From assembly GCF_963853765.1 (NCBI RefSeq), contig NC_088855.1, positions 7,812,001-7,876,000 of the forward strand: a stretch of 64,000 nt of DNA. Direction: 5' to 3'. The notes beneath the pieces were generated by a model. It saw only the letters and a program-made list of their open reading frames with translations, had not been told where the DNA came from and ran no database searches. Position numbers and translations under genes: made by a program. Each line of letters starts with the position of its first letter. Position 1 is the first letter of the stretch. The stretch comes from Magallana gigas (taxonomy: Eukaryota). This document shows positions 14,190 to 28,800 of the stretch, one piece after another.

Positions 14190-17100
14190 TCATTTCTTCT
14201 TGTCCTCCTTGCAGCAGATGACATACCTCTGGGCGACCAGGAGGGGCGGGGAGTAACCGTCAGGGTAGGAGGTGTCCTCAAACAGCACCGAGTAGTCATC
14301 CTGGGGCTGAGTAAAAAAAAAAGATTGCAAACATTAGGGTAACATATTGGTCAGTTCATGTAACACTTCACAGGGGCATACATGTAAACAGATACATAGG
14401 ACCTTTCTACTTTTGTAATGGGATAGGTATTGTAGGATCTTTCTACTTTTGTAATGGGATAGGTATTGTAGGATCTTTCTACTTTTGTAATGGGACAGGT
14501 ATTGTAGGATCTTTCTACCAAATAGATAACGTGGGGCTGGGTAAAAAAGACAACAAAATTAATTGGCTAGGACATTTCTTTCTACATTTGTGTTGGGATG
14601 GGTCTTTTTGTCCAATGTATTGTGTGAAGGGAGAGAAAACAAGCAGGATAAAAATCGTTCTCAACCATAAAATTGTAAGAGATTGAATTGTTTTTGAAAG
14701 CCTTTTGAATTATGAAAGATACAAACTTCATAGCAATGTTATGTAAAATACATTATGATCATCACACTGATATATAATACAATATACAGTGACATTGATA
14801 ATACATTCATGTATACATGTTCATATATAATCAAAATGTCACAGGATTTCAAACCTGCTACACAAACATTACCTTTTTGGGGGGTTCGTGGATCAAGGCT
14901 CTGTAAAAACAAGTGGTTTGTGGGTACAGGGCAAGAACAAGCTGAAATACAAAATCCAAGAATCTCTATTAAATAAAGACATCCATAAGATGAACGTTCA
15001 TTCTCTGCTTAAGATTGTTTTTGCCAAGTTTTTCTTTATATAACACATAGAAAATTTAAAAAAAACAACCATTTTTAACAAAAGAATATATATTTTCTTC
15101 AAATTAATAATATTGACTTAGACCTCTTTAATATAATGTATAATATATAAAAAGTCTAGGAAACTGTTTAGAATTGGAGCACAAGCTCCATGCTTGTTCA
15201 GACAGTTTAGAATTGGAGCACAAGCTCTTGTGGTACTAAAGATAGATACTTACTGTGTCCTTCATGAACAGGGCATCTGGATCTGTCTCCGGATTTGCTT
15301 TCCAGATGGGAAGTGGAACAATTCGCCTCTTGCTGAGGGTATGTCTCCTTAAAATTAAATACAAATTACCAGTAACCAAAAACCTACCTCAAACAACAGA
15401 ACTAATAGTCCTAAATTAAAGATGCAGGTTACTACAAGTATATTTATAGGGATCCAAGGACCATTATATTAAAAATAAACTAGGTTTCAAGCTGCTTGAT
15501 CATCATATTATTTTACCAAAGGGTAAAAGTTAATTAACTCTTTAAAAAGATTCACCCTAATGTGGAAGTCAAAACATTTTCCATGGGACCTTGGCTTTTG
15601 ACAACATCACAACCTAATGAGCTTTTAAAAGTGTTTTGGTGAACCAAAAATAAATTTTGTGTTCAATTTTCATAGTAAAGTATAAGTTAATGATGTTTTC
15701 GTAATTTAACCCAACAATTTTTTTTTTCATATACATTGTAACGTAATGATATCTTTGAAAAAAGCACAGTTATGATGATGTAATTTGATGAATGGTTATT
15801 TGTGGGGTTTAAAATTAATGGAAAAATATAAAACCATACAGCTTTGAGGTTTTAAATTTTAAATTGCTATAACTTTATTGCTGGAGTCAACACCACATTC
15901 GGGATTGTTTGATCATCAATCCAAATTAAACTTGGTAAGAAAAAACTCTTTCTAAATTTTCATAAAATTTCCCTACTGCCTGAATAATTTTCAATAAATC
16001 CCAAAATTTGATTGATAATAGTGAAACCACATTTTTATTACTATCTGTCACAAATATCTGCCTATTTTCATTGAAAGTCAAACTTTTTGTCTTCATTTCT
16101 TGGTTTGGTTAAAAAAAAATACCACAATGTGCACATCATCTTGACAATTCATAAACAGAATAATAATTTCATTGTGGCCTTTCACCATGGGAACATGTCA
16201 TGGAAATATATGTACCAGGAAATGTAATACGAACACACACACACATACCTCAAGACTATGTAGAAGTATGAAATGAATATATAAGAAAATTTTTCATGTT
16301 GAATTAATTGCTTCTACATCTATTTCACAAAGTAAATATTCATTTTCTTCTCTCTTTTTTCAACACCATTTTACAAAATTACACCCACTCCTACTGTGGC
16401 CTCTCTCTGGGATTATGGTTAACTTAACTATCTGTATACATGTAGGGCGCCTGTAAAGTGCGAAACGAAATCGAAACGAAACGAAACGAGATCGAACGAA
16501 ACGAAACGAAACAAAACCAATCGAAACGAAACCAATCGAAACGAAACGACATCAAACGAAACGAAACCAAAAATCGAAACGAAACGAAACGGAATTTAAA
16601 CAAAACTAATATCGATTTTGACTACATAAAAGTGAAAATAAATTCATTGAAATAAATTTTTGAACCATAAAATATAACTACCTGTATTTTTCAGATTGTC
16701 GCTGTAAGTTTTTAAGCCGATTATCCGAAATTTGCAAAAATTATATAATTATGTAAATAAGTGATGTACATTCCTCTACCTTTTAATGTTTCTAATTTGT
16801 TTCATTAAATGATATTCAGACGTTTAGAGAGAGAGAAAGATGCCTTAAAACTTATCAGCTACATCACATAGCAAAGTATATACGCAATTTTGGGAGAGAG
16901 AGAAAGAAAGAAAGAGATAGAGATATGATGATGATACTGAAGGGGGCATTCTAACAACAATTTTCTTTCTATCGATTTGAAATATTGTAAAAATAAAACG
17001 ATCGAATACAATGTGGTTTAGAGCATACTGGTTGGTTACCAGTTTCTAACTTATAATAAGAATTGTTGTAATATGTATAGCATTAATTTGGACCTCGTAA

Positions 17101-20100
17101 TTTGACAAAATTAACGTGCAAGATAAAGAGGTTTTTTTTTTTACTTGTGTTTTACCTTAAATCAAACATAATCCCCTCTTTCTCTCCTTTCACACGCACG
17201 CACGATGTATTTGAATCCTTTTTACAATATTTCATTTCGATATAAAAATATCGTGTAGTTGGAATGTCTCCGTAAATACTGTAAATTCACTATATTTAGG
17301 GTGTACAATATTTGGTGGAATATAATTTTTCAACAAGTTAGCATGGATTTGATTTAGCGCATTTCTGAATTTACCTTTTTTATCTAGTTATATATTTTAC
17401 ATTTGGCAATGTACTAAGTCTTGATTTTTGCGGACGCCGTTTTCCGCCAAAAACGCAAAATAGAATACACAGCCAAAGGGGTAAAGACAGTTTTTTAATA
17501 CGTTTACAGTATAATCATCTTTATATTGCACGTTAATTTTGTCAAATTACGACGTCCCAATTCATGCTATACATATTACAACTGTTACAATTCTTATTAT
17601 ATGTTCGAAACTGGTAACCAACCAGTATGCTCTAAATCACATTGTATTCGATCGTTTCATTTTAACAACAATATTTCAAATCGATAGAAAGAAAACTGAT
17701 TTTAGAATGTCAAGGTAGAGGAATGTACATCACTTATTTACATAATTATATAATTTTTGCAAATTTCAGATAATCGGCTTAGAAATTTTCAGCGGCAATC
17801 TGAAACATACAGGTAGTTATATTTTATGGTTCAAAAGTTTACTTCAATGAATTTATTTTCACTTTTATGTAGTCAAAGTTGATATTATATTAGTTTTGTT
17901 TAAATTCCGTTTCGTTTCGATTTTTTGATTTTTGGTTTCGTTTCGCTTGATTTCGTTTCGTTTCGATTTCGTTTCGCACTTTACAGGCGCCCATACATGT
18001 ACTAGATTGCTTCTCTTCATCATACCGATATATGATAAGAACATAGTAAGTTGTCAGAACTTGTGCTCAAACCATTTTATATAATAAAATATGTTCAAAC
18101 CACTAATGTACAGTAACATCTATTTCACAAATTATAGCTTTTATGTATTTTTTTAAAAGAAATGTTTATCACATATTTTCTATTTAAAATAAATATATAT
18201 CTCTAAATAGTGGCCCTTTCTCATCCCCAGGGGTTACTGAGTGTCTAAAAGTGAAAATAGTGTTTTACATATAATTCTACAAGTTACAGCCTTCAATTTT
18301 CTTCAGAAGGATTCTTTTTTGTTGTTGTAAAAACTGCACTACTTCCCTTGAACCCTCTCATTGCCAGATCACTCATGGCTTCCTTTTACATGTATGTTGA
18401 TTACATTTATTCACAGCTTCTATTTACTTCAAAAGAATTTGTGAAATCGATACTCACTCTTTGCCTTCATCTGCATCAATGTCATCAACGTCGTATTTAT
18501 TTGAGCTCTGATTGAAGTTGACAACTTCTGCCAGGATCCAGTTCTCCTCCTCGTCGGACTTGACCCGTGCTGCCACCTTGTCGCCAGGCTTTGCCACGTA
18601 GTTACTGTCCGCCGACATAGCACCGCATAAAGGCGGGGGTCTACAAGAGGAACAGATCTGTAGAACCTAGTGTACCATAGTGCATGCACCACATGGAGGC
18701 TTCCATCAGATTTATACATACAAGACTGTCAAACTCATTATGAATGCAAAATGTTCGTTGGACAAGATTTCAAAATAAAAATGCACAATATCCAATCTTA
18801 CTAGAGGTACACTACATTGTTAAGTTCAGGCGGATGTAATGGATTCTAAATTTCAGTTACTACTAGTATATGTAATGAGCAAAATGGGTTGAATTCTGTA
18901 AACTAACTTTATTCGCTATTTACTTCTGATAAACAGACTTGTGACGACTAATGTTCACGACCAAGCCTTATTCAGACATGTGTTGTTACAACAAGGACTG
19001 GTTTGGGGCAAGAAATATTCATAACAATGAGGCTCTCGCTAACCTAGCAAAATTTCTTGCACACGAATAATAGTTGGTTAACAGTAACTACTCCCCAAAA
19101 CTTAGATTTGCCAATTCTGATACAATAACAAACATTTTGCATGTGTAAAGTTTGCTTTGCTAGTGAAAGCTGTTAAATACAAGTATATAGCGAGCAACAC
19201 CCATTTGATCATCTATTGAATAGCACCTTGACCCACCTCTCTCCTGGCTTGCTGACCCACAGGGGCAGAGTCTGGGCATTCTGCTGCAGCATAGACATCA
19301 GAACTCCACGCCTCATGATTGGCTTGGGTCGGTCCGAGTCTGCAAATGTAGGATTTGTTTTTATATACTGACCATTCAATCTCTCTCTAAATATGGGGAA
19401 AATGAGACTGGAATGTACAGACCTAGCCTTCTGTTTTCTCTTATGCTTTTCACTTCAGTAATCTTATCAAGAGCTTTCCTCAGTAGTCTACAAATCAGAA
19501 AAAGATGTAATAAATAATTAAAGGCTCTAAGGGAGGCATAAGATACCAAATAGCAGTACATATGTATATGTAATATGTCAGAATCATTATACAATGATGT
19601 GTTGATGAATATAATTCAGAGAATAGTGATTAGCTTCATTTCTCCCTAAATCAAATACAAAACATCGTACTCAGCCTCTAACTCTGCATCCTGCATGGCT
19701 GTCTTGTATAATCCTTTTAGTTTGTTCTTGTAGTATGGTGTTACTAAAAAGGAAAAAATAAGACTATATATGTACTGTATATCAATTACATGTATATCAA
19801 CCGATTCCTAGTGTGATTTCTTTATTCCAGAGCAGTAAACAATGACATTAAACCGTTTCAAGAGGTTAAAAATACAAAATCCTTTAGAAGATACACATGT
19901 ACGTGTTATCTCAAAATCTTGGTTGAAGGCAGACTTAGTAACTCTTAGTACTGTATAAATGCACTTAATGGGGAAAAACTAAAATTACATTCATCATTTA
20001 AAATCATCAAAGCAATTATAATATTTATAAATGAGATAGAAATTAAGGATAAAAGAAATGGGCTTACTTTCGTTCTTACTTTTTTGTTCCTGCTGCATCC

Positions 20101-22945
20101 TTTCGTGGGTCTTAGAGATGTTGGTAAGATTGTGCTCACCTTGGGCTCTCTCATCCTATTGACCAAGATTTCAAGTTGTTTTTTTTATTTTAACATACTG
20201 TATTTCATTACATTGAAAATAAAATAATTCATAACTTAGTTTATGTTTCTGAGCAAAATGTTGATTACCAATTCAAAAGAATGAATAAATCTTACAATGG
20301 AAAATCGAATCAGCACAATCTGACTATGCCGTTAAGACAAGACAAGAAAAACATAGGTAATCACAGATTACAAAGCTCACCGAGACGAGGCATCAACTTT
20401 ATGAGGCATCACCTTTAAAACCACCTTTATCATATGATATGAAAATCATAGTTAATGATCTTGGATATTCATGGATACTGTTTTGACACAATATCGTATA
20501 TCATATGTAAAAAATTGTATGATAATCCTATGTTCATTTCATACATTATTATAAGATACAATGTTTATCAATACAGTAATATAAAATATGATATTGCATC
20601 CAATGATACTTACAATATATATCATTTAATACAATATAATACTGTAATAAATATTGATGCAATATGATTTTGTAACATATAATATGACATTGTATCGTGT
20701 TATACATTATTGTATTTAATCACATAATACAATATCATAATATCTAATATAAATACAATATAGCATTATTTGATACTATATCATATCACATAATACATCA
20801 CAATATTGTAACATATGATATTATATTGTATAATATAGTATAATTTTGTATTGTATGATATTGTATCATATTTGATACACAATATTGTATCATATGATAC
20901 AATATAATTTGATAAAACATTGTTTCATATCATATGATACAATATCATCTGATACAGTACGATATTATATAATACAATATCATTTTATACAATATCATAT
21001 CATATGATACAATATCATATTATACAATATCATATTATATGATATCTTATAATATCATATAATACAATTTCATGTATTATATAACAATATATTATATAAA
21101 CCAATATCATATTATACAATATTTTATCATACGATATGCTATAATTATAATATACAATATCGTATCATATGATACAATATCATATATTGCAATATAATAT
21201 GAAACAATATCATTCGATAAAATAATATATTATACAATATCATATTCTACAATATTGTATAATAATATACAATACTATACATAACAATATCATAATACAA
21301 TATCATATAATAATGTACAAAAAAATTGATACAATATCATATCATATCATATAACTTTTTACAATATAATGTATGATATTACATTGTATCATATAAAACA
21401 ATAGTGTATCATATCATAGAATACTATATCATAGGAATCATGTTAAATCATTTAACAACAAACACATCTATCAAGCAGGTTTGAGTGAGGTAGGAGAATT
21501 TTTAGCATCCTTGATAATGGAGATCAGGCTCTGCATCTGAAGCTACCTCTGCAATTCATTTATATTATAGTTAAATCAATTATGCAAGCTATTATCTATA
21601 AAACATGTAACCTGTTCCAAAAAACTAAACCTCATCCAGCATCCGAAACCTATGGCTCAGATTCAGCATTCAAGCCTGTCAGATGCATCAGTATCATGAG
21701 ATGCATCATCCCTGCAAGTTTGGTGATGTAAGGACCAGTAATAACTAAGATATAATCATCAGAGGGCACCTGCTCTAAAAACTTTAACCAGCTCTTAAAA
21801 CCTTAACCTCATCCAGCATCCGAAACCTATGGCTCAGATTCAGCATTCATGCCTGTCAGGTGCATCAGTATCGTAAGACGCACCATCCTTGCAAGTTTGG
21901 TGAAGTTAGGACCAGAAATAACTAAGATATATTTTTTAGCATCCTTGATAATGGAGATCAGGATCTGCATCTGAAGCTACCTCTGCCATTCATTTATATT
22001 ATAGTTAGATCATATATGCAAGTTTGAAATAGTGCTATTACCTACATATATTAAACATGTGACCTGTTCCAAAAAAACTAAACCTCATCCAGCATCCGAA
22101 ACCTATGGCTCAGATTCAGCATTCAAGCCTGTCAGGTGCATCAGTATCATAAGACACACCATCCATGTAAGTTTGGTAAAGTTAGGACCAGTAATAACTA
22201 AGATATGATCATCAGAGGGCACCTGCTCTAAAAACTTTAACCAGCTCTTAAAACCTTAACCTCATCCAGCATCCGAAACCTATGGCTCAGATTCAGCATT
22301 CAAGCCTGTCAGGTGCATCAGTATCATAAGATGCACCATCTATGCAAGTTTGGTGAAGTTGGGACCAGTAGTAACTTAGAAATGGCTATCAAAGGGCACC
22401 TGCAACAAAAACTTTAACCTGCTCGAAAAACCTAACTTCATCTAGCATCCGAAACCTTCGGCTCAGATTCAGCATTCAAGCCTGTCAGGTGCAAAAGTAT
22501 CATAAGACACACCATCCATGCAAGTTTGGTGAAGTAAGGACCAGTAGTAAGTAAGATATAATCATCAGAGGGCACCTGCTCCAAAAACTTTAACCAGCTC
22601 TAAAAACCTTAACCTCATCCAGCATCCGAAACCTATGGCTCAGATTCAGCATTCAAGCCTGTCAGGTGCATCAGTATCATAAGACACACCATCTATGCAA
22701 GTTTGGTGAAGTTTGGACCAGTAGTAACTTAGAAATGGCTATCAAAGGGCACCTGCAACAAAAACTTTAACCTGCTCCAAACACCTTAACCTCCTCCAGC
22801 ATCTGAAATTCATGGCCCAGATTCAGCATCCAAGTCTCTCAAGTCCATTAGTAGGTCCAGATGCATCATTCATGCAAGTTTGGTGAAGATAGGACAAGTA
22901 ATAAGTTAGATACAGGACCTGCAACAAAAACTTTAACCAGGTCCG

Positions 22946-22979
<34 letters not shown>

Positions 22980-23468
22980 GTATAGCATAAGCTCCCCCCG
23001 ACTTCGTCTCGGTGAGCTAAAAATTGTGGCACCTTTTCAAGTGTGTTAAGAATATCCTAATATTACAATCTGAGTGCAGTGACAATGTGATTACAGTGAC
23101 AATGTGACTCATTGATAATGTGACTACAGTGACAATGTAACCACAGTGATATGTGACAACAGCGACAGTGTGACTACAGTGACAATGTGACTACAGTGAC
23201 AATGTGACTCATTGATAATGTGACTACAGTGACAATGTAACCACAGTGATATGTGACAACAGCGACCATGTGACTACAGTGACAATGTGACTACAGTTAC
23301 AATGTGGGTGCCGTGTACATGTACCTGTATCTGATGAATGAGTTCGTACAGCTCCTTCAGTAGGTCTTTGATGCGCGTTTCTGCAGCAGCTGTGCTCGTG
23401 GAGTTGTCGGACGTCAGCGGACTCTGACTGGATCCCCCACCACCACTGTTTGTTTTAGTTCTCCCCAT
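14190..23468 (-). CDS. SGF29: SAGA-associated factor 29 (tandem Tudor H3K4me2/3 reader), 9 coding exons (23468-23325, 20155-20080, 19743-19671, 19487-19423, 19339-19237, 18640-18458, 15347-15254, 14941-14873, 14306-14190), ~307 aa
   Basis: Spliced product contains TPYYKNKLKGLYKTA, LLRKALDKI, MRRGVLMSMLQQ, PPPLCGA, KPGDKVAARVK, WILAEVV, RRIVPLP, LVLALYPQTTCFYRALIH, YSVLFEDTSYPDGYSPPL.VAQRYV, all hallmark SGF29 motifs; phases consistent; 924 nt. Confidence 0.96.
14397..14518. repeat. 36-bp minisatellite, ~3.4 copies, in the last SGF29 intron
   Basis: TAGGA(C/T)CTTTCTACTTTTGTAATGGGA(T/C)AGGTATTG at 14397, 14433, 14469 and a partial copy at 14505. Confidence 0.9.
16445..17992. mobile_element. 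Foldback / long-TIR non-autonomous DNA transposon with 9-bp TSD (Mutator-like signature)
   Basis: Ends GGGCGCCTGTAAAGTGCGAAACGAAA / TTTCGTTTCGCACTTTACAGGCGCCC; ATACATGTA at 16436-16444 and 17993-18001; arms pair over ~550 bp; subterminal (CGAAA)n. Confidence 0.88.
18894..19086. mobile_element. TACTGT..ACAGTA-type MITE (Tc1/mariner-like TA ends)
   Basis: Imperfect TIRs TTCTGTAAACTAACTTTATTCG / CGAATAATAGTTGGTTAACAGTA; related copy at 29600-29813. Confidence 0.55.
20450..21440. repeat. AT-rich degenerate simple-repeat block (ATATC/GATACAAT motifs)
   Basis: ~1 kb of ATATCATAT, GATACAATAT and complements; includes the perfect palindrome ATATTGTATCATATGATACAATAT at 20882-20905. Confidence 0.85.
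21628..22945. repeat. ~177-bp satellite-like tandem array, 7 monomers, plus a 434-bp-period segmental duplication
   Basis: Monomer starts (AACCTCATCCAGCATCCG or close variant) at 21628, 21805, 22081, 22258, 22434, 22611, 22788; TTTAGCATCCTTGATAATGG at 21501 and 21935. Confidence 0.93.
23075..23306. repeat. 17-bp minisatellite (GTGACTACAGTGACAAT) with a 100-bp higher-order duplication
   Basis: Repeated units visible; AATGTGACTCATTGATAATG at 23101 and 23201. Confidence 0.9.
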
Positions 23469-24564
23469 TTCTTCAAACAGAAATGTTTAAATTTCATACA
23501 AAAAGTAAATTACTTAAAACATTTCAAATTTGCTGACAACTTTATGCTTAGCATCAAATACACTGTATGTTTTAAAAAAGAATAATGATATGTAATAAAG
23601 GTATTCTGACCATCAGTATTTTCTCCCATCATATTACATTGTGACCAGCCCTTAGAATTATCATGTTAAGGTCAAGAGATAAATGGAAATCTAAAAGAAC
23701 CTCGATGTCACTGTATAAGGGCAGGATTGTTGCATTAAGATGGTATGGTAGAGAATCTATCTTAAGAGTTTGATAGAAAACCCCAGTCTTTAGTATTTTA
23801 TTGTGTCTCTTTACCAGATACATATAAATGAAACTGTACTTCTGATGGATATTGAACAAAAAGATCATGAGTATTAGCATCTATAATTTCAATGATAGGT
23901 TTAGCTATAAAGCTTGAAAAAGCTATTAAGTTTAATAAAGCTATTCGGAATAGCTTGATTTAGGTGTTTTGTCATACGTTTTTCTTAAATGGGTATTTTT
24001 TCATTATGTATAAACAAAATTGCACTTCGGTGCAGTGACAGTTTTTAACTTTTAACAATGCAAGATTATATAAACAAGGTAAAGATTACTTATCAAATTG
24101 GGTCTCTTTCAAAAACACAAAAGTTTAAGTTCTAAAAGTTTTTGGGCAATTGATTTGTGATCACACAGTTACTTCATGAATGAAATATAAAGAAGGTCAG
24201 TTGTTGTAAAAAAGATAATTGATCATGTTGATTGGAAATAATACAGCACAATGTGAAAAATCATACTGATCCACACCTCAGTGCACCCAAGGTGGTGGAC
24301 AGTAATATCCATTGTTTTCCCTTGGACTGAAATGTCACATTTTCATTGGTTTAAACATAGCACGTGATTGCCTCATATATCTCTATATTTGTTCTGTGAG
24401 AAATAATATTAGGCAATATATATGGCCATCATTGGTCGATGCTTCGCTTACTCATTTCGACATTTCATAGTATTTTATACGTAAACTTGTCGTAAGTTCT
24501 TAAAGTATTTGGAGTAGTTGCCCTTTGAATTTTTTAAAAATTAGAGTAGTTGCCCTTAGAATAT

Positions 24565-24606
24565 TGACGTCACATTGTTTTGTCTGGAGCAGAACAAAAT
24601 GGCAGC
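24565..24606 (+). promoter_or_regulatory. Candidate promoter motifs in the SGF29/TLCD3 divergent spacer: CRE (TGACGTCA) and YY1-like AAAATGGCAGC
   Basis: TGACGTCA at 24565-24572, AAAATGGCAGC at 24596-24606; plus-strand GTAAGT near 24677 and minus-strand GTAAGC at 24451 suggest UTR exons. Motif match only. Confidence 0.35.
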
Positions 24607-24861
24607 GTCGAAATTTGCTTAAATCTCTGCAGAGGAAAGGGAGAAAACATTTAAAATTGAATAGCAACAAAACATTGTAAGTAAACATGGGTGAAGCAAA
24701 GATTTTGAAAGAGTATTTGAAAGGTGAAATTGAAAATTTTGAAGAGTTTAAATGAGTTAAATTGGATGAGATGAAAGGCATCTTGTACATGGCTTTGCGT
24801 AGATCATCGCTATTTGTGAATAAATATGTCGCTTAATGATAGTCCTCGAGAAAACAAAACA

Positions 24862-24887
24862 CTTATCAGGTTAGTTACTGACTCACT

Positions 24888-24920
<33 letters not shown>

Positions 24921-24937
24921 AGGCTCGGCTTCGCCTC

Positions 24938-24974
<37 letters not shown>

Positions 24975-25000
24975 AGTGAGTCAGTAACTAACCTAATAAG
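24862..25000. repeat. Near-perfect 139-bp hairpin (palindromic MITE)
   Basis: 59-bp arms with one mismatch; 21-nt loop AGGCTCGGCTTCGCCTCGCCA. Confidence 0.92.
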
Positions 25001-25864
25001 TAATAATATATGGAAATATATATTAAATTTTAATAAGGTTTGCTTTTTAAATGGTCTATGGTATAAATATGAGTGGTAATTAACTTGCAGTTTTTTTTGT
25101 ATATTTTGGAGAATTAACATTTTTGTGAAAAATTGCATATTTATAGCTATATCAAGCTATTCTGAATAGATTTATTAAGCTATTTAGCTTTTTACAAGCT
25201 TTATAGCTAAATCAAGAGATTGTGCTGGACCTGCAATAACCAATTTTATAAAAACGATGATAGAGTCTGGTGCCTTAATCATATGGCATATCATTTAATC
25301 TTGATAAAAAGTTAATTGACCTTTAAAGCATTTTCATGATTATCACAATATTCGGATAAACGATGTATCGAATCAGCTGATTTAATGTGTAAACAAGCCC
25401 AACAACATTCTGACGTACAAATGAGCTGTCGGGTTTTCCTGCTGTAGATTCTTAAATCATAGCATTTTTACTTTATAAAAACATCTCTGACACAAATATC
25501 TAGATTTGAAACAAACTTGCCTGTCTCAAATTCGTTGTTCTTGCAACTGCAAGGCAGCGAAGGCTCCTTAGCTTTGTTCACCGGAAGTTAAGAATTAAGA
25601 ACTAAATGTAAACTTGCTCTAATATTTCGATCATCTGTGAATAGCTGCCTCCAATTTTTTACCATAAAGCCCTAAATACATTTATTTATAAATATAATTT
25701 CATTATTTGCTCTGTGTAAAGAATGAAACACCTTTCTACAATTGAATAAGAAAAATCGGGATCGATATACAGAAAATTGACATCTGATTTGCAACGATGT
25801 TTTTGATTCGTTGATTCGTATTCTTACGATACATTTGATTAGTCGATGGTAGGTATCAACAAAT

Positions 25865-28800
25865 ATGGAGGAGCTAGGCGTTTTCGTCTGCGGTTCCATA
25901 TTCTTTCCTGCATGTTTTATCATTATTCGATATCTTCTTTACGCGTTTTTTGGCTCCAGACTTACTGATGCTGACGTCCATAATGTAACTGAAAAGTATG
26001 TATAAGTGACATCAATATTTGGATTTTAATAGACATATTTGGTGATAGAGATAGACGGATGTCTAATTTTAGATGTCAAAGTTATTGCAAAATGTAGAAC
26101 ACCCTCCTGCCCCGAAATTTACTTTGTTAGTTTTTGATTTATGTGTTTCATTTATGTTTTGTGTATGTTTGCGTGTGTTGTTTAATATGTAAGAATGGGG
26201 TCAAAATATGGGTTAAAAACCATGTAAACTGTCGTGTTAAAAATAATTAATTGCACAAAATTTGTTATGTTTATGGATTGTTCAAATTGTAAGATGTTAA
26301 CATCCGGAACATGGCTACTATAACCTGTCTCAAGTTTCTTTTTATCTTATGTTAAACTATTGAAATCTATTGAAGCATAAAAGTACCTTACACCAGCTTT
26401 TTCCAGATATGCCTACACTCTGACATGTTTTCAGCAGCTTGATGTTAGGATCTCCAGGACATATTAAGAAACATTTTTTTAAATTCATGGCGTGCAACCA
26501 TTTATCGCACGTACCATTCCTCACCAGTGCATTGTTTGATATGTCATTTTATCAGCACTTAAAATTATACACGAAAAATGACGTAAATAACAATGCACTG
26601 GTGAGAAAGGGTACTCAGCAAGAACTGGTTGCATGCCAGTAATCGATAAATTTTATAATCTTGCTTGATATGTATTCTTTTTTCATAATTGTGTTTGGGT
26701 GCCATAAAATAAAAACCCAAGTTTTAATTTTAAATAAGCTTTATTAATGTCGGTATATGTATTTATTACTTATTGGCAAATATAAAAACCATTTGTTTTT
26801 TTTTTGATAGATGTGTATCAAGTATTCAAGCAGCCACAGCAACAGTAGTTGGTTTAATCATTGCAGTAAAATGTCAGAAAGATATCATGATGGACAGGTA
26901 AACTTTATATCGATGTCAGTTTCCTAAATTTGATTTACCAGAGTATTTATACTTAATCATGTTAATAATAGGTAAATTACTTACATGATATATTTTGTTT
27001 TGATGTTTTTAATAACAGACCAATGCACATAACAGATGAATGCTTATACCCATTAAGAATTGTTTATTTTGTTGTCCCTTCACAGACAAGGAAATCAAGA
27101 TTTCAAACTTGGTGACGTACTTTTCAGTTGATGGCAAAATCTGCATTTATTTTAGTCTTGCTACATGCATCTGTATAATAGTATGTGTGTATCATTAAGG
27201 GATTCAAGATGATTTGAGTATTTCACTGATAAATTTCCAGCCAGTGTACAGACTTTTTGTAGTACAATCTGCTTTGAAACAAAGAAAAAAAAATTGTTAT
27301 TACTTTCAATTACCCTGTAAGACATTTTTTAAATTTATGTATTAACTTGGCTGACAGCTGATTGAGGATGCCTCTCCATATATAATCTCGCAAAAAATAT
27401 GAATATGCTTTACTTGTTTCCTTGAATTAAATGATATCAGATTTCTGTAAAACATTGCTTACATCATGATATCAGCTTATTTCATTCTGCTGAAATAGGA
27501 GTTTGAATTTCTAGAATACAGGTGCTAGACAACAGGTTTGTTTTGTTGGTATTTTTTTTTTGCTCTTTTTTTCCCCCTCATTTAAATTATCATCATGTTA
27601 ATTTGCTAGACAAACAAATCATAAAATTGGAGAAGTCTACCAAATTTATTCACTAATTAAATTTTACAGAATATTTGTATGCCTGTATGGTAAATAATGA
27701 GTTAGGAGTGTACCTGTTAAGTTACTTCTATACCCAGCACATGGAAGAGTTTTGCCTTTGATGTAGAATAAACAAACTATTTTTAGACATGATATCTAAG
27801 CATTTTAAAAACATTTTATTTTGTTTGATGCAATATACAGTACGTTGAAATCATCGATGTCATGTACGGTAATAATTTTTTTATATTACACTGTGATGAG
27901 CCCTCCATGAATTTATGGCAGACATATCTTTTGCATCTGAAATCCAATCAAAATGTGATTTATTGATTAAACAGTGGGTTTAAAAGTTCAATATCTGGAG
28001 AAAAAACAAATTTAATACCCATTTTATTTTAATAGTACCCCATCGCTCCCGTTAAAAACGATATGAATGTCAATTTTTTTTATCATCAAGAACTTAATTC
28101 TTACAAGTATTACACTATAAATAGCATCCTAGTATATATTTTTTATTTATAAATAAAAAATATACACTGATTTTTGTTAATGTAAATTCCCATGCAAAAT
28201 ATTGACATGTTTATGTATAATTACGGATGAAGGATGGCATAAATTAACCTCCCTTCCCCAAACTATATAAATTTAGGGGTTTTTTTTTCGGACATTAGTC
28301 TTTGATCTCGCTTCTAACAATGAATTCTATTGAAGAGGCCCCTTGGTCAACAAATTAAGCATCAGATCGGTGCAAAACTTTTAGATATGATATTTTTGGT
28401 CATAGACTATCATTTAGTGAAGAAATAATTTATCCAAATAATTTTAGTTTTAAAAAAATTTGTACATTTTTCTTATATCTTTATACAGAGCTCTTCATCT
28501 AAAGAAAGTAAATTTTAGGCTAAAAATGGCCACAACCATCTAGCTCTCTTAATGTAGTAATGACTGTGGCATGGAAAATTTTACCATGGCCCTAGATACT
28601 TGACTGTGGCACTTAAAAAAGTGTACTTACTGTGATAGTCGCATGTACACAGTGAAAAGGCTTAAAATGAGAATACTGCGCATGTATTAAACTAAATAAC
28701 TTCTGGGGAAGTTCCCATTGACAGCATTTCTGTCCTTTCTTCATTTCCATATGTTATTGATCTATGAGTATACATATCTTTGTTATTTCTTCAAAATTTA

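What the first reader, a model, noticed from the sequence alone, without database searches (positions are those of the whole stretch)
23382..23468. SGF29, the H3K4me3 reader, begins with a histone H3-like tail: (M)GRTK
Seen: the predicted N-terminus is MGRTKTNSGGGGSSQSPLTSDNSTSTAAA, an extension ahead of the conserved ETRIKDLL helix, with an in-frame genomic stop 7 codons upstream of the ATG. Known: Met is removed before Gly, which would leave G1-R2-T3-K4, against histone H3 A1-R2-T3-K4; the SGF29 tandem Tudor binds the free H3 N-terminus in one pocket and K4me2/3 in an aromatic cage whose residues (YPQTTCFY, FED) are intact here; human SGF29 lacks this motif. Inference: a built-in histone mimic on a flexible Gly/Ser linker that could be methylated by SET1/MLL-type enzymes and compete for its own or another reader's pocket, an auto-regulatory switch for SAGA/ATAC recruitment that I do not know to be described. 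Caveat: a candidate UTR exon ending ...AAATGA|GTAAGC at 24452 joined to the AAG acceptor 2 nt before the ATG would give MKMGRTK and bury the motif unless leaky scanning occurs.
Basis: partly seen in the sequence, partly recalled or inferred. Interest (0 to 1): 0.75.

Follow-up and report, generated by a model that had tools for sequence, protein, structure and literature searches.

The report
Histone-H3-like tip on mollusc SGF29
The oyster version of SGF29, a protein that reads the histone mark H3K4me3, really does begin with Met-Gly-Arg-Thr-Lys; this histone-H3-like tip has been kept in molluscs and annelids while the stretch behind it drifted, so it is a selected motif, but what it does is still untested.

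Summary
A nine-exon SGF29 gene lies on the minus strand and encodes 307 aa, with intact Tudor cage residues.

RNA-seq junctions show a 5'UTR exon at about 25521-25596. It is spliced through a GC-AG intron to the acceptor 2 nt before the ATG. That exon has no ATG and carries an in-frame TAA, so MGRTK is the true start.

The motif is deeply conserved:
- M-G-R-T-K in every bivalve sampled, in Octopus and in caenogastropods.
- M-G-R-S/N-K in other gastropods.
- M-G-R-P/S/V-K in annelids.

Synonymous codon changes accompany this conservation. Mean pairwise identity is 0.86 for residues 2-5, against 0.39 for the linker and 0.67 for the coiled coil.

The motif fits the published class of "H3 N-terminal mimicry" proteins (M-Z-R-X-K). 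The proposed mechanism, methylation and self-binding, is untested. An AlphaFold model does not dock the tail. Cnidarians, amphioxus and a sea star have M-R-R-x-R/K, where Met should stay on, so the ancestral motif may not need a free H3-like end. Heterobranch snails shift the Lys by one residue.

Verdict: a real, selected, apparently undescribed motif. Histone mimicry is plausible but not shown.

The parts
25521..25596 (-). 5'UTR exon (minimum extent). It has no ATG and carries an in-frame TAA at 25590-25588.
   Evidence: Junction 23470|25521 in run X21 (4 reads, 4 starts) and in a run X2 contig with 76 nt on this side. The translated leader equals the prefix of P0229, a cluster of 89 member sequences.
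23471..25520 (-). 5'UTR intron of 2050 nt with a GC-AG boundary (donor AG|GCAAGT, acceptor ttgaag|AA).
   Evidence: skips 2050, ends CT..GC on the + strand; sequence.
23325..23470 (-). First coding exon: 2 nt of leader, then 48 codons (tail, linker and start of the coiled-coil helix).
   Evidence: Both of its junctions are seen in RNA. Genomic ORFs of the same exon occur in three species.
23454..23468 (-). ATG plus codons 2-5, GGG AGA ACT AAA: M-G-R-T-K, the H3-like tip.
   Evidence: Conserved with synonymous changes in L001 and L002 and across Mollusca and Annelida.
23382..23453 (-). Gly/Ser/Thr-rich disordered linker (codons 6-29) containing a conserved Ser-Pro.
   Evidence: AlphaFold pLDDT is below 50 for residues 7-19.
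20080..20155 (-). Coding exon 2 (coiled coil).
   Evidence: junction with exon 1 seen in all 4 runs.
19671..19743 (-). Coding exon 3.
   Evidence: GT-AG, frame kept, matches orthologues.
19423..19487 (-). Coding exon 4.
19237..19339 (-). Coding exon 5.
18458..18640 (-). Coding exon 6: first Tudor domain, including D207 and D209 (equal to human D194 and D196).
   Evidence: Pfam SGF29_Tudor E=3.7e-10. PDB 3ME9 and 3MEW, human SGF29, E about 3e-21. Numbering.
15254..15347 (-). Coding exon 7.
14873..14941 (-). Coding exon 8: cage residues Y252 and Y259 (motif YPQTTCFY).
   Evidence: these columns are invariant in A4.
14190..14306 (-). Coding exon 9: cage residues F278 and D280 (motif FED); stop TGA at 14192-14190.
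24452..24480 (-). No use of it is detected.
   Evidence: The sequence is present. The region 24130-25120 is covered on both strands by 90-95 % matching reads, as a repeat would be. The junctions that one search prints (15 of 144) and the transcript ORFs show only the 25521 exon.

Best explanation
The window encodes the SGF29 orthologue of an oyster. SGF29 is the H3K4me2/3-reading subunit of the SAGA and ATAC acetyltransferase modules. Its mRNA starts translation at the first AUG, giving M-G-R-T-K.

Shown:
- The start is real.
- The pentapeptide is a selected short linear motif. It is more conserved than the coiled coil behind it, across molluscs and annelids.
- It sits at the tip of a disordered Gly/Ser linker.

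Inferred from established rules:
- Met aminopeptidase removes Met before Gly. This exposes G1-R2-T3-K4 with a free alpha-amine, which matches the published definition of an 'H3 N-terminal mimicry' motif (M-Z-R-X-K).

Most likely mechanism (inferred, not shown):
- The tip acts as a pseudo-H3 tail that occupies a pocket built for the first four residues of H3.
- Three such pockets sit in the same complexes: SGF29's own tandem Tudor (needs the A1 pocket plus K4me2/3), the ZZ domain of ZZZ3 (needs the free amine, insensitive to methylation) and WDR5.
- Occupying one of them would tune or gate binding of SAGA/ATAC to real H3 tails.
- Modification of K4, T3 or the alpha-amine would act as the switch.
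For: Start:
- Junctions 23470|25521 and 20154|23324.
- The leader has no AUG and has an in-frame TAA.
- The 89-member transcript cluster P0229 has the same leader.
- The mussel locus L001 has an in-frame TAA two codons before its ATG.

Identity:
- Pfam PF07039 and human SGF29 structures.
- 64-67 % identity to vertebrate SGF29.
- Cage and Asp-x-Asp columns are invariant in 47 species.

Conservation:
- MGRTK in 11 named bivalves, Octopus, Pomacea, Batillaria and Babylonia.
- MGRSK or MGRNK in Patella, Haliotis, Littorina, Lottia and Gigantopelta.
- MGRPK, MGRSK or MGRVK in Paralvinella, Capitella, Dimorphilus and others.
- Synonymous changes in codons 2, 4, 5, 6 and 8 between three bivalves.
- Pairwise identity is 0.86 for residues 2-5, 0.39 for the linker and 0.67 for the coiled coil.

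Disorder: pLDDT is below 50.

Literature:
- The SGF29 Tudor needs only ARTKme3 plus the A1 pocket (PMC4589357).
- The H3TM class includes PRTK, VRTK and GRKK N-termini. These bind H3K4me3 readers when methylated, and some can be methylated in vitro (PMC8166343).
- The ZZZ3 ZZ domain in ATAC cages the free amine of H3 A1 and contacts residues 1-4 (PMC6138639).
Against: - No binding, methylation or N-terminal processing data exist for any mollusc SGF29.
- AlphaFold2 with a 47-sequence alignment does not dock the tail. This is a weak test, because it models a single chain with no methyl-lysine.
- Position 1 is Gly, not Ala.
- N-terminal Gly may be acetylated by NatA (general knowledge). Acetylation would block A1-type pockets, as acetyl or biotin on H3 A1 does for ZZZ3.
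- Outgroups such as Nematostella, Actinia, Branchiostoma, Acanthaster, Owenia and Lingula begin M-R-R-x-[RK] or M-R-K-x-K. Met is expected to be retained there, so the motif is probably older than its H3-like form.
- Heterobranch snails have M-[PG]-R-x-[SNT]-K-G-K, which breaks the R2-K4 spacing.
- Position 3 is free in annelids (P, V, S).
- In the H3TM array study the only Tudor protein reported to bind such peptides was SPIN1. Whether SGF29 was on the array is not stated.
Confidence: 0.35

Rival explanations
1. The tip is a generic, ancient basic N-terminal motif, M-x-R-x-[KR]-[GS], inherited from the cnidarian-bilaterian ancestor. It would work without a free H3-like end, for example as an arginine or lysine anchor on DNA or on the nucleosome acidic patch, as a contact to a partner in the HAT module, or as an aid to nuclear import. 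On this reading the exact match to x-R-T-K of H3 in molluscs is incidental.
For: - M-R-R-S-R-G in Nematostella and Actinia, M-R-R-G-R-G in Branchiostoma, M-R-R-A-K-S in Acanthaster, M-R-K-A-K-S in Owenia and M-R-H-K-S-G in Lingula align position by position with M-G-R-T-K-[SGT].
- Arg after Met blocks Met removal (MetAP rule as quoted in PMC8166343).
- Heterobranchs conserve a shifted version.
- Position 4 varies among T, S, N, P and V.
- AlphaFold shows no docking.
Against: - In molluscs and most annelids, position 2 is fixed as Gly (or Pro in heterobranchs and Trichinella). Both residues permit Met removal.
- Thr is invariant in all bivalves, Octopus and caenogastropods, giving exactly x-R-T-K.
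- Four residues are too few for a classical nuclear localisation signal.
- The motif sits on a protein whose complexes hold three pockets for this very peptide.
- No known acidic-patch, AT-hook (RGRP) or NuRD (RRKQxxP) consensus is met.
Confidence: 0.4
2. The conserved N-terminal Gly serves a Gly-specific fate rather than mimicry: N-myristoylation, or recognition as a Gly N-degron that sets SGF29 turnover.
For: - Gly2 is invariant in 33 non-redundant sequences chosen because they carry the motif, so this invariance is partly by construction.
- Residue 6 is mostly T, S, G or A (29 of 33), as in the myristoylation pattern.
Against: - Arg at position 3 is excluded by the PROSITE myristoylation pattern (from memory).
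- SGF29 is a nuclear chromatin protein.
- Heterobranchs and Trichinella replace Gly by Pro but keep Arg and Lys.
- Arg3 and Lys5 are as conserved as Gly2, which a Gly-only signal does not explain.
Confidence: 0.07
3. There is no function: a chance resemblance in a lineage-specific disordered extension, or constraint acting on nucleotides (splice acceptor and Kozak context) rather than on the peptide.
For: - The ATG lies 2 nt after the acceptor, and G at +4 is part of the Kozak context.
- In human, 48 of 20996 proteins carry M-Z-R-X-K at the N-terminus, so such tips do occur by chance.
Against: - The amino acids are kept through synonymous codon changes (GGG/GGT, ACT/ACC, AAA/AAG).
- In Mytilus the acceptor is not next to the ATG, yet the peptide is the same.
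- The motif is conserved across classes of molluscs and annelids while the adjacent linker is only 39 % alike.
Confidence: 0.03

Closest known systems
H3 N-terminal mimicry proteins (H3TMs; Chen, Horton, Sagum, Zhou, Cheng, Bedford, Biochem J 2021, PMC8166343)
   Same: - N-terminal M-Z-R-X-K with a small Z that allows Met removal.
- A disordered tip on a chromatin protein.
- Human members include HIVEP1 (PRTK), PCLAF (VRTK) and MEF2C (GRKK).
- K4me3 forms bind PHD fingers and the SPIN1 Tudor, and unmethylated forms bind NuRD.
- Some members are methylated by Set7/9 or MLL1 in vitro.
   Different: - Here the carrier is itself an H3K4me3 reader.
- The motif is absent from the human, fly and tick orthologues and is confined to lophotrochozoans and some other invertebrates.
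- No binding or methylation data exist.
- Even for the human H3TMs, K4me3 was not found in vivo.
Histone H3 N-terminal tail (ARTKQTARKS...)
   Same: - x-R-T-K at a Met-free N-terminus followed by a flexible segment.
- The first four residues suffice for the SGF29 Tudor and for the ZZZ3 ZZ domain.
   Different: - Gly replaces Ala1.
- Nothing corresponds to Q5-K9 or K14, so it cannot serve as a GCN5 substrate of the H3K9/K14 type.
- Thr3 is not kept outside molluscs.
FOG1, SALL and BCL11A N-terminal NuRD/RBBP4-binding motif (MSRRKQxxP)
   Same: A short basic motif at the extreme N-terminus of a transcription regulator. It competes with the unmodified H3 tail for RBBP4/7, as summarised in PMC8166343.
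   Different: The consensus RRKQxxP is not met by GRTK[TSG]. No link between SAGA/ATAC and NuRD is known to me.
Lysine-methylated histone mimics in chromatin enzymes and viral proteins: G9a ARKT automethylation, LIG1 K126, influenza NS1 ARSK
   Same: A short H3-like peptide on a non-histone protein, read by a histone reader when methylated (review PMC6028506, listed; the rest from memory).
   Different: Those mimics are internal or C-terminal and mostly copy H3K9, or H3K4 without the free amine. None sits on the reader of the mark it copies.
WDR5 WIN motif (A-R-[AST]), including N-terminal ART-type ligands
   Same: Arg flanked by small residues. WDR5 is an ATAC subunit and binds H3 R2 (general knowledge; reviews listed).
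   Different: The residue before Arg is Ala in the WIN motifs I recall (from memory). Here it is Gly, Pro or Arg.

Membership tests
SGF29 (SAGA-associated factor 29) orthologue | C-terminal tandem Tudor domain of the SGF29 type | tested here: met
   PF07039 hit at E=3.7e-10 on exon 6 alone. Human SGF29 crystal chains 3ME9, 3MEW and 3MEA match at E about 3e-21.
SGF29 (SAGA-associated factor 29) orthologue | K4me2/3 half-cage (human Y238, Y245, F264, D266) and the Asp-x-Asp of Tudor 1 | tested here: met
   Oyster Y252, Y259, F278, D280 and D207/D209. These columns are invariant in 47 species. The cage residue list comes from PMC4589357. The role of D194 and D196 in the A1 pocket is from my memory of Bian et al. 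2011, which could not be opened.
SGF29 (SAGA-associated factor 29) orthologue | N-terminal coiled coil and full-length collinearity with known SGF29 | tested here: met
   64-67 % identity over about 290 aa to vertebrate SGF29 and 64 % to tick SGF29. AlphaFold gives helices 22-70 and 75-119, then two beta-barrel regions.
H3 N-terminal mimicry protein (H3TM, M-Z-R-X-K) | Small residue after the initiator Met (A, G, S, C, T, P or V), so that Met is cleaved | tested here: met
   Residue 2 is Gly. The rule is as quoted in PMC8166343. Actual cleavage was not measured.
H3 N-terminal mimicry protein (H3TM, M-Z-R-X-K) | Arg at mature position 2 and Lys at mature position 4 | tested here: met
   G-R-T-K. 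R and K are invariant by construction in the 33 non-redundant sequences selected for M-G-R-x-K. Independently of that selection, the motif is present in all named bivalves, Octopus, non-heterobranch gastropods, Paralvinella, Dimorphilus and Capitella.
H3 N-terminal mimicry protein (H3TM, M-Z-R-X-K) | The motif is at the true translational N-terminus | tested here: met
   The spliced leader has no AUG and has an in-frame TAA. An 89-member transcript cluster has the same leader. Ribosome profiling or proteomics was not available.
H3 N-terminal mimicry protein (H3TM, M-Z-R-X-K) | Disordered N-terminus on a chromatin-associated protein | tested here: met
   pLDDT is below 50 for residues 1-4 and 7-19. 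The SGF29 identity is shown above.
H3 N-terminal mimicry protein (H3TM, M-Z-R-X-K) | Binding to H3-tail readers, and K4 methylation | not testable with these tools
   This needs peptide binding assays, in vitro methylation and mass spectrometry.
N-myristoylation signal | G at 2, an uncharged residue at 3, S/T/A/G/C/N at 6 | tested here: not met
   Residue 3 is Arg in all sequences. Residue 6 fits in 29 of 33. The pattern was recalled from PROSITE PS00008.
NuRD/RBBP4-binding N-terminal motif | RRKQxxP | tested here: not met
   GRTK[TSG]x[SG] has no RRKQ and no Pro at the required place.
AT-hook | R-G-R-P core flanked by basic residues | tested here: not met
   Molluscs have G-R-T/S/N-K. Only some annelids have G-R-P-K, without the preceding Arg.

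The most novel reading that the evidence does not exclude
In molluscs and annelids the H3K4me3 reader of SAGA/ATAC carries its own ligand. After Met removal the G-R-T-K tip is methylated on Lys4 by the H3K4 methyltransferases. It then folds back on its Gly/Ser tether into the tandem Tudor of the same or a neighbouring SGF29, using the A1 pocket and the K4me cage. The result is a writer-controlled auto-inhibitory or oligomerising switch that real H3K4me3 tails must out-compete. Phosphorylation of Thr3 or of the conserved Ser-Pro would act as a second input.
Probability: 0.12. Interest if true: 0.8.

Novelty: new member of a known kind. Interest (0 to 1): 0.6.

Why it matters
SGF29 directs the GCN5/PCAF acetyltransferase modules of SAGA and ATAC to H3K4me3 promoters. 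All mechanistic work on it uses yeast, fly and human proteins, and the fly-like and vertebrate sequences seen here lack this N-terminal extension.

The tip is more conserved than the neighbouring folded coiled coil. That gives a concrete, cheap test of whether histone readers can be gated by built-in tail mimics. The test uses peptides, recombinant Tudor, ZZ and WDR5 domains, and a mutant lacking residues 2-5.

It also adds an evolutionarily validated case to the H3TM class, whose in vivo relevance is still unproven. If the motif instead works through a free-end-independent basic contact, that would point to an unrecognised ancestral function of the SGF29 N-terminus, lost in vertebrates and most arthropods.

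Tried and rejected
1. The only junction onto the acceptor among the 15 of 144 junctions that one search prints comes from 25521. All transcript-derived ORFs carry the 25521 leader. The 24130-25120 region is a repeat covered on both strands by 90-95 % matching reads.

2. The 21-residue N-terminal extension in P0229 is rejected as an artefact. It comes from a bacterial-style gene caller starting at a GTG in the leader. Both GTG and the in-frame CTG have poor context.

3. Pfam on exon 1 alone gave no family.

4. Bian et al. 2011 (PMC3160252), the structural paper on SGF29 and H3K4me3, is not held. The roles of the A1-pocket residues therefore rest on PMC4589357 and on memory.

5. PMC10889360 and PMC10636195 were searched for tolerance of the SGF29 A1 pocket or of T3. 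Nothing useful was found.

6. AlphaFold2 of the Met-less protein with 47 orthologues was run to see whether the tail docks. It stayed at low confidence. The tool takes no peptide-plus-domain complexes or methyl-lysine, so the test is weak.

7. The bacterial promoter scan is irrelevant to a eukaryote and was ignored.

8. P0006 could not be traced to a contig. The species behind L001 was inferred to be Mytilus, from the identity of its exon with P0240.

9. The representative search with exon 6 returned mostly single-exon fragments. It still supplied the full-length seeds for the word search.
Full report
**What is in the sequence**

The finding lies on the minus strand. The ATG at 23468-23466 is followed by GGG AGA ACT AAA (Gly-Arg-Thr-Lys). 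A Gly/Ser/Thr-rich stretch runs through codon 29 (23382). The helix beginning ETRIKDLL follows, up to a GT donor after 23325.

I assembled nine coding exons, all with GT-AG borders. They give a 307-aa protein ending at TGA 14192-14190.

It is an SGF29 orthologue:
- Exon 6 alone hits Pfam SGF29_Tudor at E=3.7e-10.
- Exon 6 also hits the crystal chains of human SGF29 (3ME9, 3MEW, 3MEA) at E about 3e-21.
- The whole protein is 64-67 % identical to vertebrate SGF29.
- The methyl-lysine half-cage named in PMC4589357 (human Y238, Y245, F264, D266) is present as Y252, Y259, F278 and D280. The Asp-x-Asp of Tudor 1 is present as D207/D209. These columns are invariant in a 47-species alignment.

**Is MGRTK the real N-terminus?**

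I laid three poly(A) RNA-seq runs (raw reads) and one contig run of the same organism on 19950-25900.
- The exon 1 to exon 2 junction (20154|23324, GT..AG on the minus strand) is seen in all four runs.
- A second junction, 23470|25521, is seen in 4 reads with 4 different starts in X21, and in a 1242-nt contig of X2.
- It joins an upstream exon to the acceptor 2 nt before the ATG.
- The intron is 2050 nt with a GC-AG boundary (AG|GCAAGT).
- Read orientation is consistent with a minus-strand transcript.

The leader exon (at least 25521-25596) has no ATG. It carries an in-frame TAA at 25590-25588, 24 codons before the start. Any in-frame AUG further upstream would therefore be terminated. The start context is gaaATGG.

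Independent support comes from P0229. This protein cluster has 89 member sequences from public transcript assemblies. Its sequence is the window protein (one allelic difference, S112G) preceded by 21 residues that are the exact translation of this leader from a GTG. That prefix is an artefact of bacterial-style start calling, but it proves the leader sequence.

It lies in a stretch (24130-25120) covered on both strands by 90-95 % matching reads, as a dispersed repeat would be. No junction from it appears among the 15 of 144 junctions that one search prints, and no transcript ORF begins MKMGRTK.

It is therefore irrelevant, but the conclusion stands.

**Is the motif conserved?**

A word search with exon 1 alone found ORFs from genomic contigs:
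- Four alleles of the same species.
- A second oyster-like species at 86 % identity, beginning MGRTKTNSGGGGG.
- A third species at 60 % identity, beginning MGRTKTISGGGG, later identified as Mytilus through P0240.

At the DNA level the three differ by synonymous changes in the motif codons (GGG/GGT, ACT/ACC, AAA/AAG, ACA/ACC/ACT). In Mytilus the ATG is not even next to an acceptor, and it has an in-frame TAA two codons upstream. The constraint is therefore on the peptide.

Full-length orthologues came from the representative search with exon 6 and from two word searches.

| Group | N-terminus | Species |
|---|---|---|
| Bivalves | M-G-R-T-K | Solemya, Tegillarca, Mizuhopecten, Mytilus, Potamilus, Sinanodonta, Mactra, Mya, Dreissena, the window species and its relative |
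| Cephalopod | M-G-R-T-K | Octopus vulgaris |
| Caenogastropods | M-G-R-T-K | Pomacea, Batillaria, Babylonia |
| Other gastropods | M-G-R-S-K | Patella, Haliotis, Littorina |
| Other gastropods | M-G-R-N-K | Lottia, Gigantopelta (annotated with one extra Met) |
| Annelids | M-G-R-P-K | Paralvinella, Capitella (behind a spurious N-terminal fusion in the gene model) |
| Annelid | M-G-R-S-K | Dimorphilus |
| Unnamed sequences in the annelid-like group | M-G-R-V-K | P0243, P0294 |

I then compared 19 named mollusc and annelid species. Heterobranchs, the chiton, Owenia and Capitella were left out. Mean pairwise identity was as follows:

| Region | Mean pairwise identity |
|---|---|
| Residues 2-5 | 0.86 |
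| Linker up to the helix (optimally gapped) | 0.39 |
| First 60 residues of the coiled coil | 0.67 |

The tetrapeptide is thus kept better than the folded part next to it.

**Where the pattern breaks**

- Heterobranch snails (Physella, Bradybaena, Elysia and unnamed relatives) have M-[PG]-R-x-[SNT]-K-G-K. The Lys is moved by one position.
- The chiton Liolophura and two nemerteans lack the extension in their gene models.
- Outside Lophotrochozoa:

| Taxon | N-terminus |
|---|---|
| Nematostella, Actinia | M-R-R-S-R-G-P |
| Branchiostoma | M-R-R-G-R-G-P |
| Acanthaster | M-R-R-A-K-S |
| Owenia | M-R-K-A-K-S |
| Lingula | M-R-H-K-S-G |
| Scolopendra | M-G-R-A-G |
| Trichinella | M-P-R-Q-K |

- Vertebrates (MALVSADSRI), ticks and insects have no extension.
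- These outgroup forms align residue for residue with the mollusc form as M-x-R-x-[KR]-[GS]. The motif therefore looks older than Bilateria.
- In the presumably ancestral form, Arg follows Met. By the Met-aminopeptidase rule (quoted in PMC8166343), the Met would then be kept. No free small residue would sit next to the Arg.

**What is known that bears on function**

- For the SGF29 Tudor, the first four H3 residues (ARTKme3) and the A1 pocket suffice for binding (PMC4589357, citing Pieters 2013 and Bian 2011).
- Chen et al. 2021 defined "H3 N-terminal mimicry proteins" (H3TMs) as proteins starting M-Z-R-X-K, with Z one of A, G, S, C, T, P or V (PMC8166343):
  - They found 48 among 20996 human proteins, enriched in chromatin binders.
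  - Members include HIVEP1 (PRTK), PCLAF (VRTK) and MEF2C (GRKK).
  - K4me3 peptides bound PHD fingers and the SPIN1 Tudor, and unmethylated ones bound NuRD.
  - Set7/9, and weakly MLL1 and PRDM9, methylated some of them in vitro.
  - K4me3 could not be shown in vivo.
  - SGF29 is not mentioned in that paper.
- In ATAC, the ZZ domain of ZZZ3 cages the free amine of H3 A1 and contacts residues 1-4. It is insensitive to K4 methylation and is blocked by acetyl or biotin on A1 (PMC6138639).
- WDR5, another ATAC subunit, binds H3 R2 (general knowledge).
- The complexes that hold SGF29 therefore contain at least three pockets for the peptide that mollusc SGF29 carries at its tip.
- Full-text searches found no paper describing an H3-like N-terminus of SGF29.

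**Structure prediction**

AlphaFold2 was run on the Met-less protein with the 47-sequence alignment. It gives a confident model (mean pLDDT 86.5) with two long helices and the two Tudor barrels. Residues 1-4 and 7-19 stay below pLDDT 50, so no docking of the tail is predicted. This is weak evidence, because the model is a single chain without methyl-lysine.

**Reading**

Shown:
- The start is real.
- The protein is an SGF29 orthologue.
- The motif is present and is under strong peptide-level conservation in Mollusca and Annelida.
- It sits on a disordered tether.
- It formally fits the H3TM definition.

Inferred:
- Met removal and a free Gly amine.
- Any binding or methylation.

I give about 0.35 to the view that the tip works as a pseudo-H3 tail in an H3-tail pocket. 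I give about 0.4 to an older, free-end-independent basic motif whose H3 likeness in molluscs is incidental. Small weights go to a Gly-specific fate and to chance.

The fixed Gly (or Pro) at position 2 and the invariant Thr in three mollusc classes favour mimicry. The outgroup forms and the shifted heterobranch form favour the rival.

**Novelty**

As a kind, H3TMs and histone mimics are known. This would be a new member whose evolutionary conservation is shown, which the human study did not examine in this way. It has the unusual feature that the carrier is itself a reader of the mark it resembles.

No human contig was handled. Mammalian SGF29 proteins appeared only as database hits.

Noticed in passing
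window 23471-25520 (minus strand): The 5'UTR intron uses a GC donor (AG|GCAAGT) instead of GT. The junction is seen in raw reads and in a contig.
   Followed up: partly
window 20350-23130 (intron 1 of SGF29): High-copy repeat covered by hundreds to thousands of RNA reads at 90-95 % identity, mostly in one orientation. It contains at least four copies of an ORF piece of about 50 aa (starts near 22599, 22255, 21976, 21802). A 'goes back 354' joint at 22431>22078 suggests a tandem-copy-number variant or a circular or rearranged transcript.
   Followed up: no
window 24130-25120: A second repeat, between the leader exon and the ATG exon, is transcribed on both strands.
   Followed up: partly
window 23020-23320 (just after the exon 1 donor): Intronic minisatellite of CACTGTAGTCACAT-like units. 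The read-through ORF tails of P0001-P0004 differ in unit number, so it is length-polymorphic between alleles.
   Followed up: no
window 19950-20079 (intron 2): The run X2 contig that carries both 5' junctions runs on colinearly past the exon 2 donor into intron 2. This points to a retained-intron or incompletely spliced form in that run.
   Followed up: no
window 23420-23425 (codons 16-17, Ser-Pro) and orthologues: A Ser-Pro dipeptide is present in the otherwise variable linker of all 17 molluscs examined, and absent in the two annelids. It may be a proline-directed phosphorylation site.
   Followed up: partly
P0200 (Gigantopelta), P0293 (Capitella), P0202 (Liolophura): The public gene models look wrong or incomplete at the N-terminus. 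Gigantopelta has an extra Met before MGRNK. Capitella has about 90 unrelated residues fused before an internal MGRPK. The chiton model starts just before the helix.
   Followed up: partly
P0259, P0263, P0296, P0254, P0261, P0298 (heterobranch gastropods and relatives): A distinct, conserved N-terminal form, M-[PG]-R-x-[SNT]-K-G-K, is followed by a much longer Lys/Ser/Glu-rich linker of about 80-100 aa.
   Followed up: no
window 23388: A>G on the + strand in 13 of 13 reads of X21 and in the X2 contig. It is a synonymous change in Ala27 (GCT>GCC), so an allelic difference from the assembly.
   Followed up: yes
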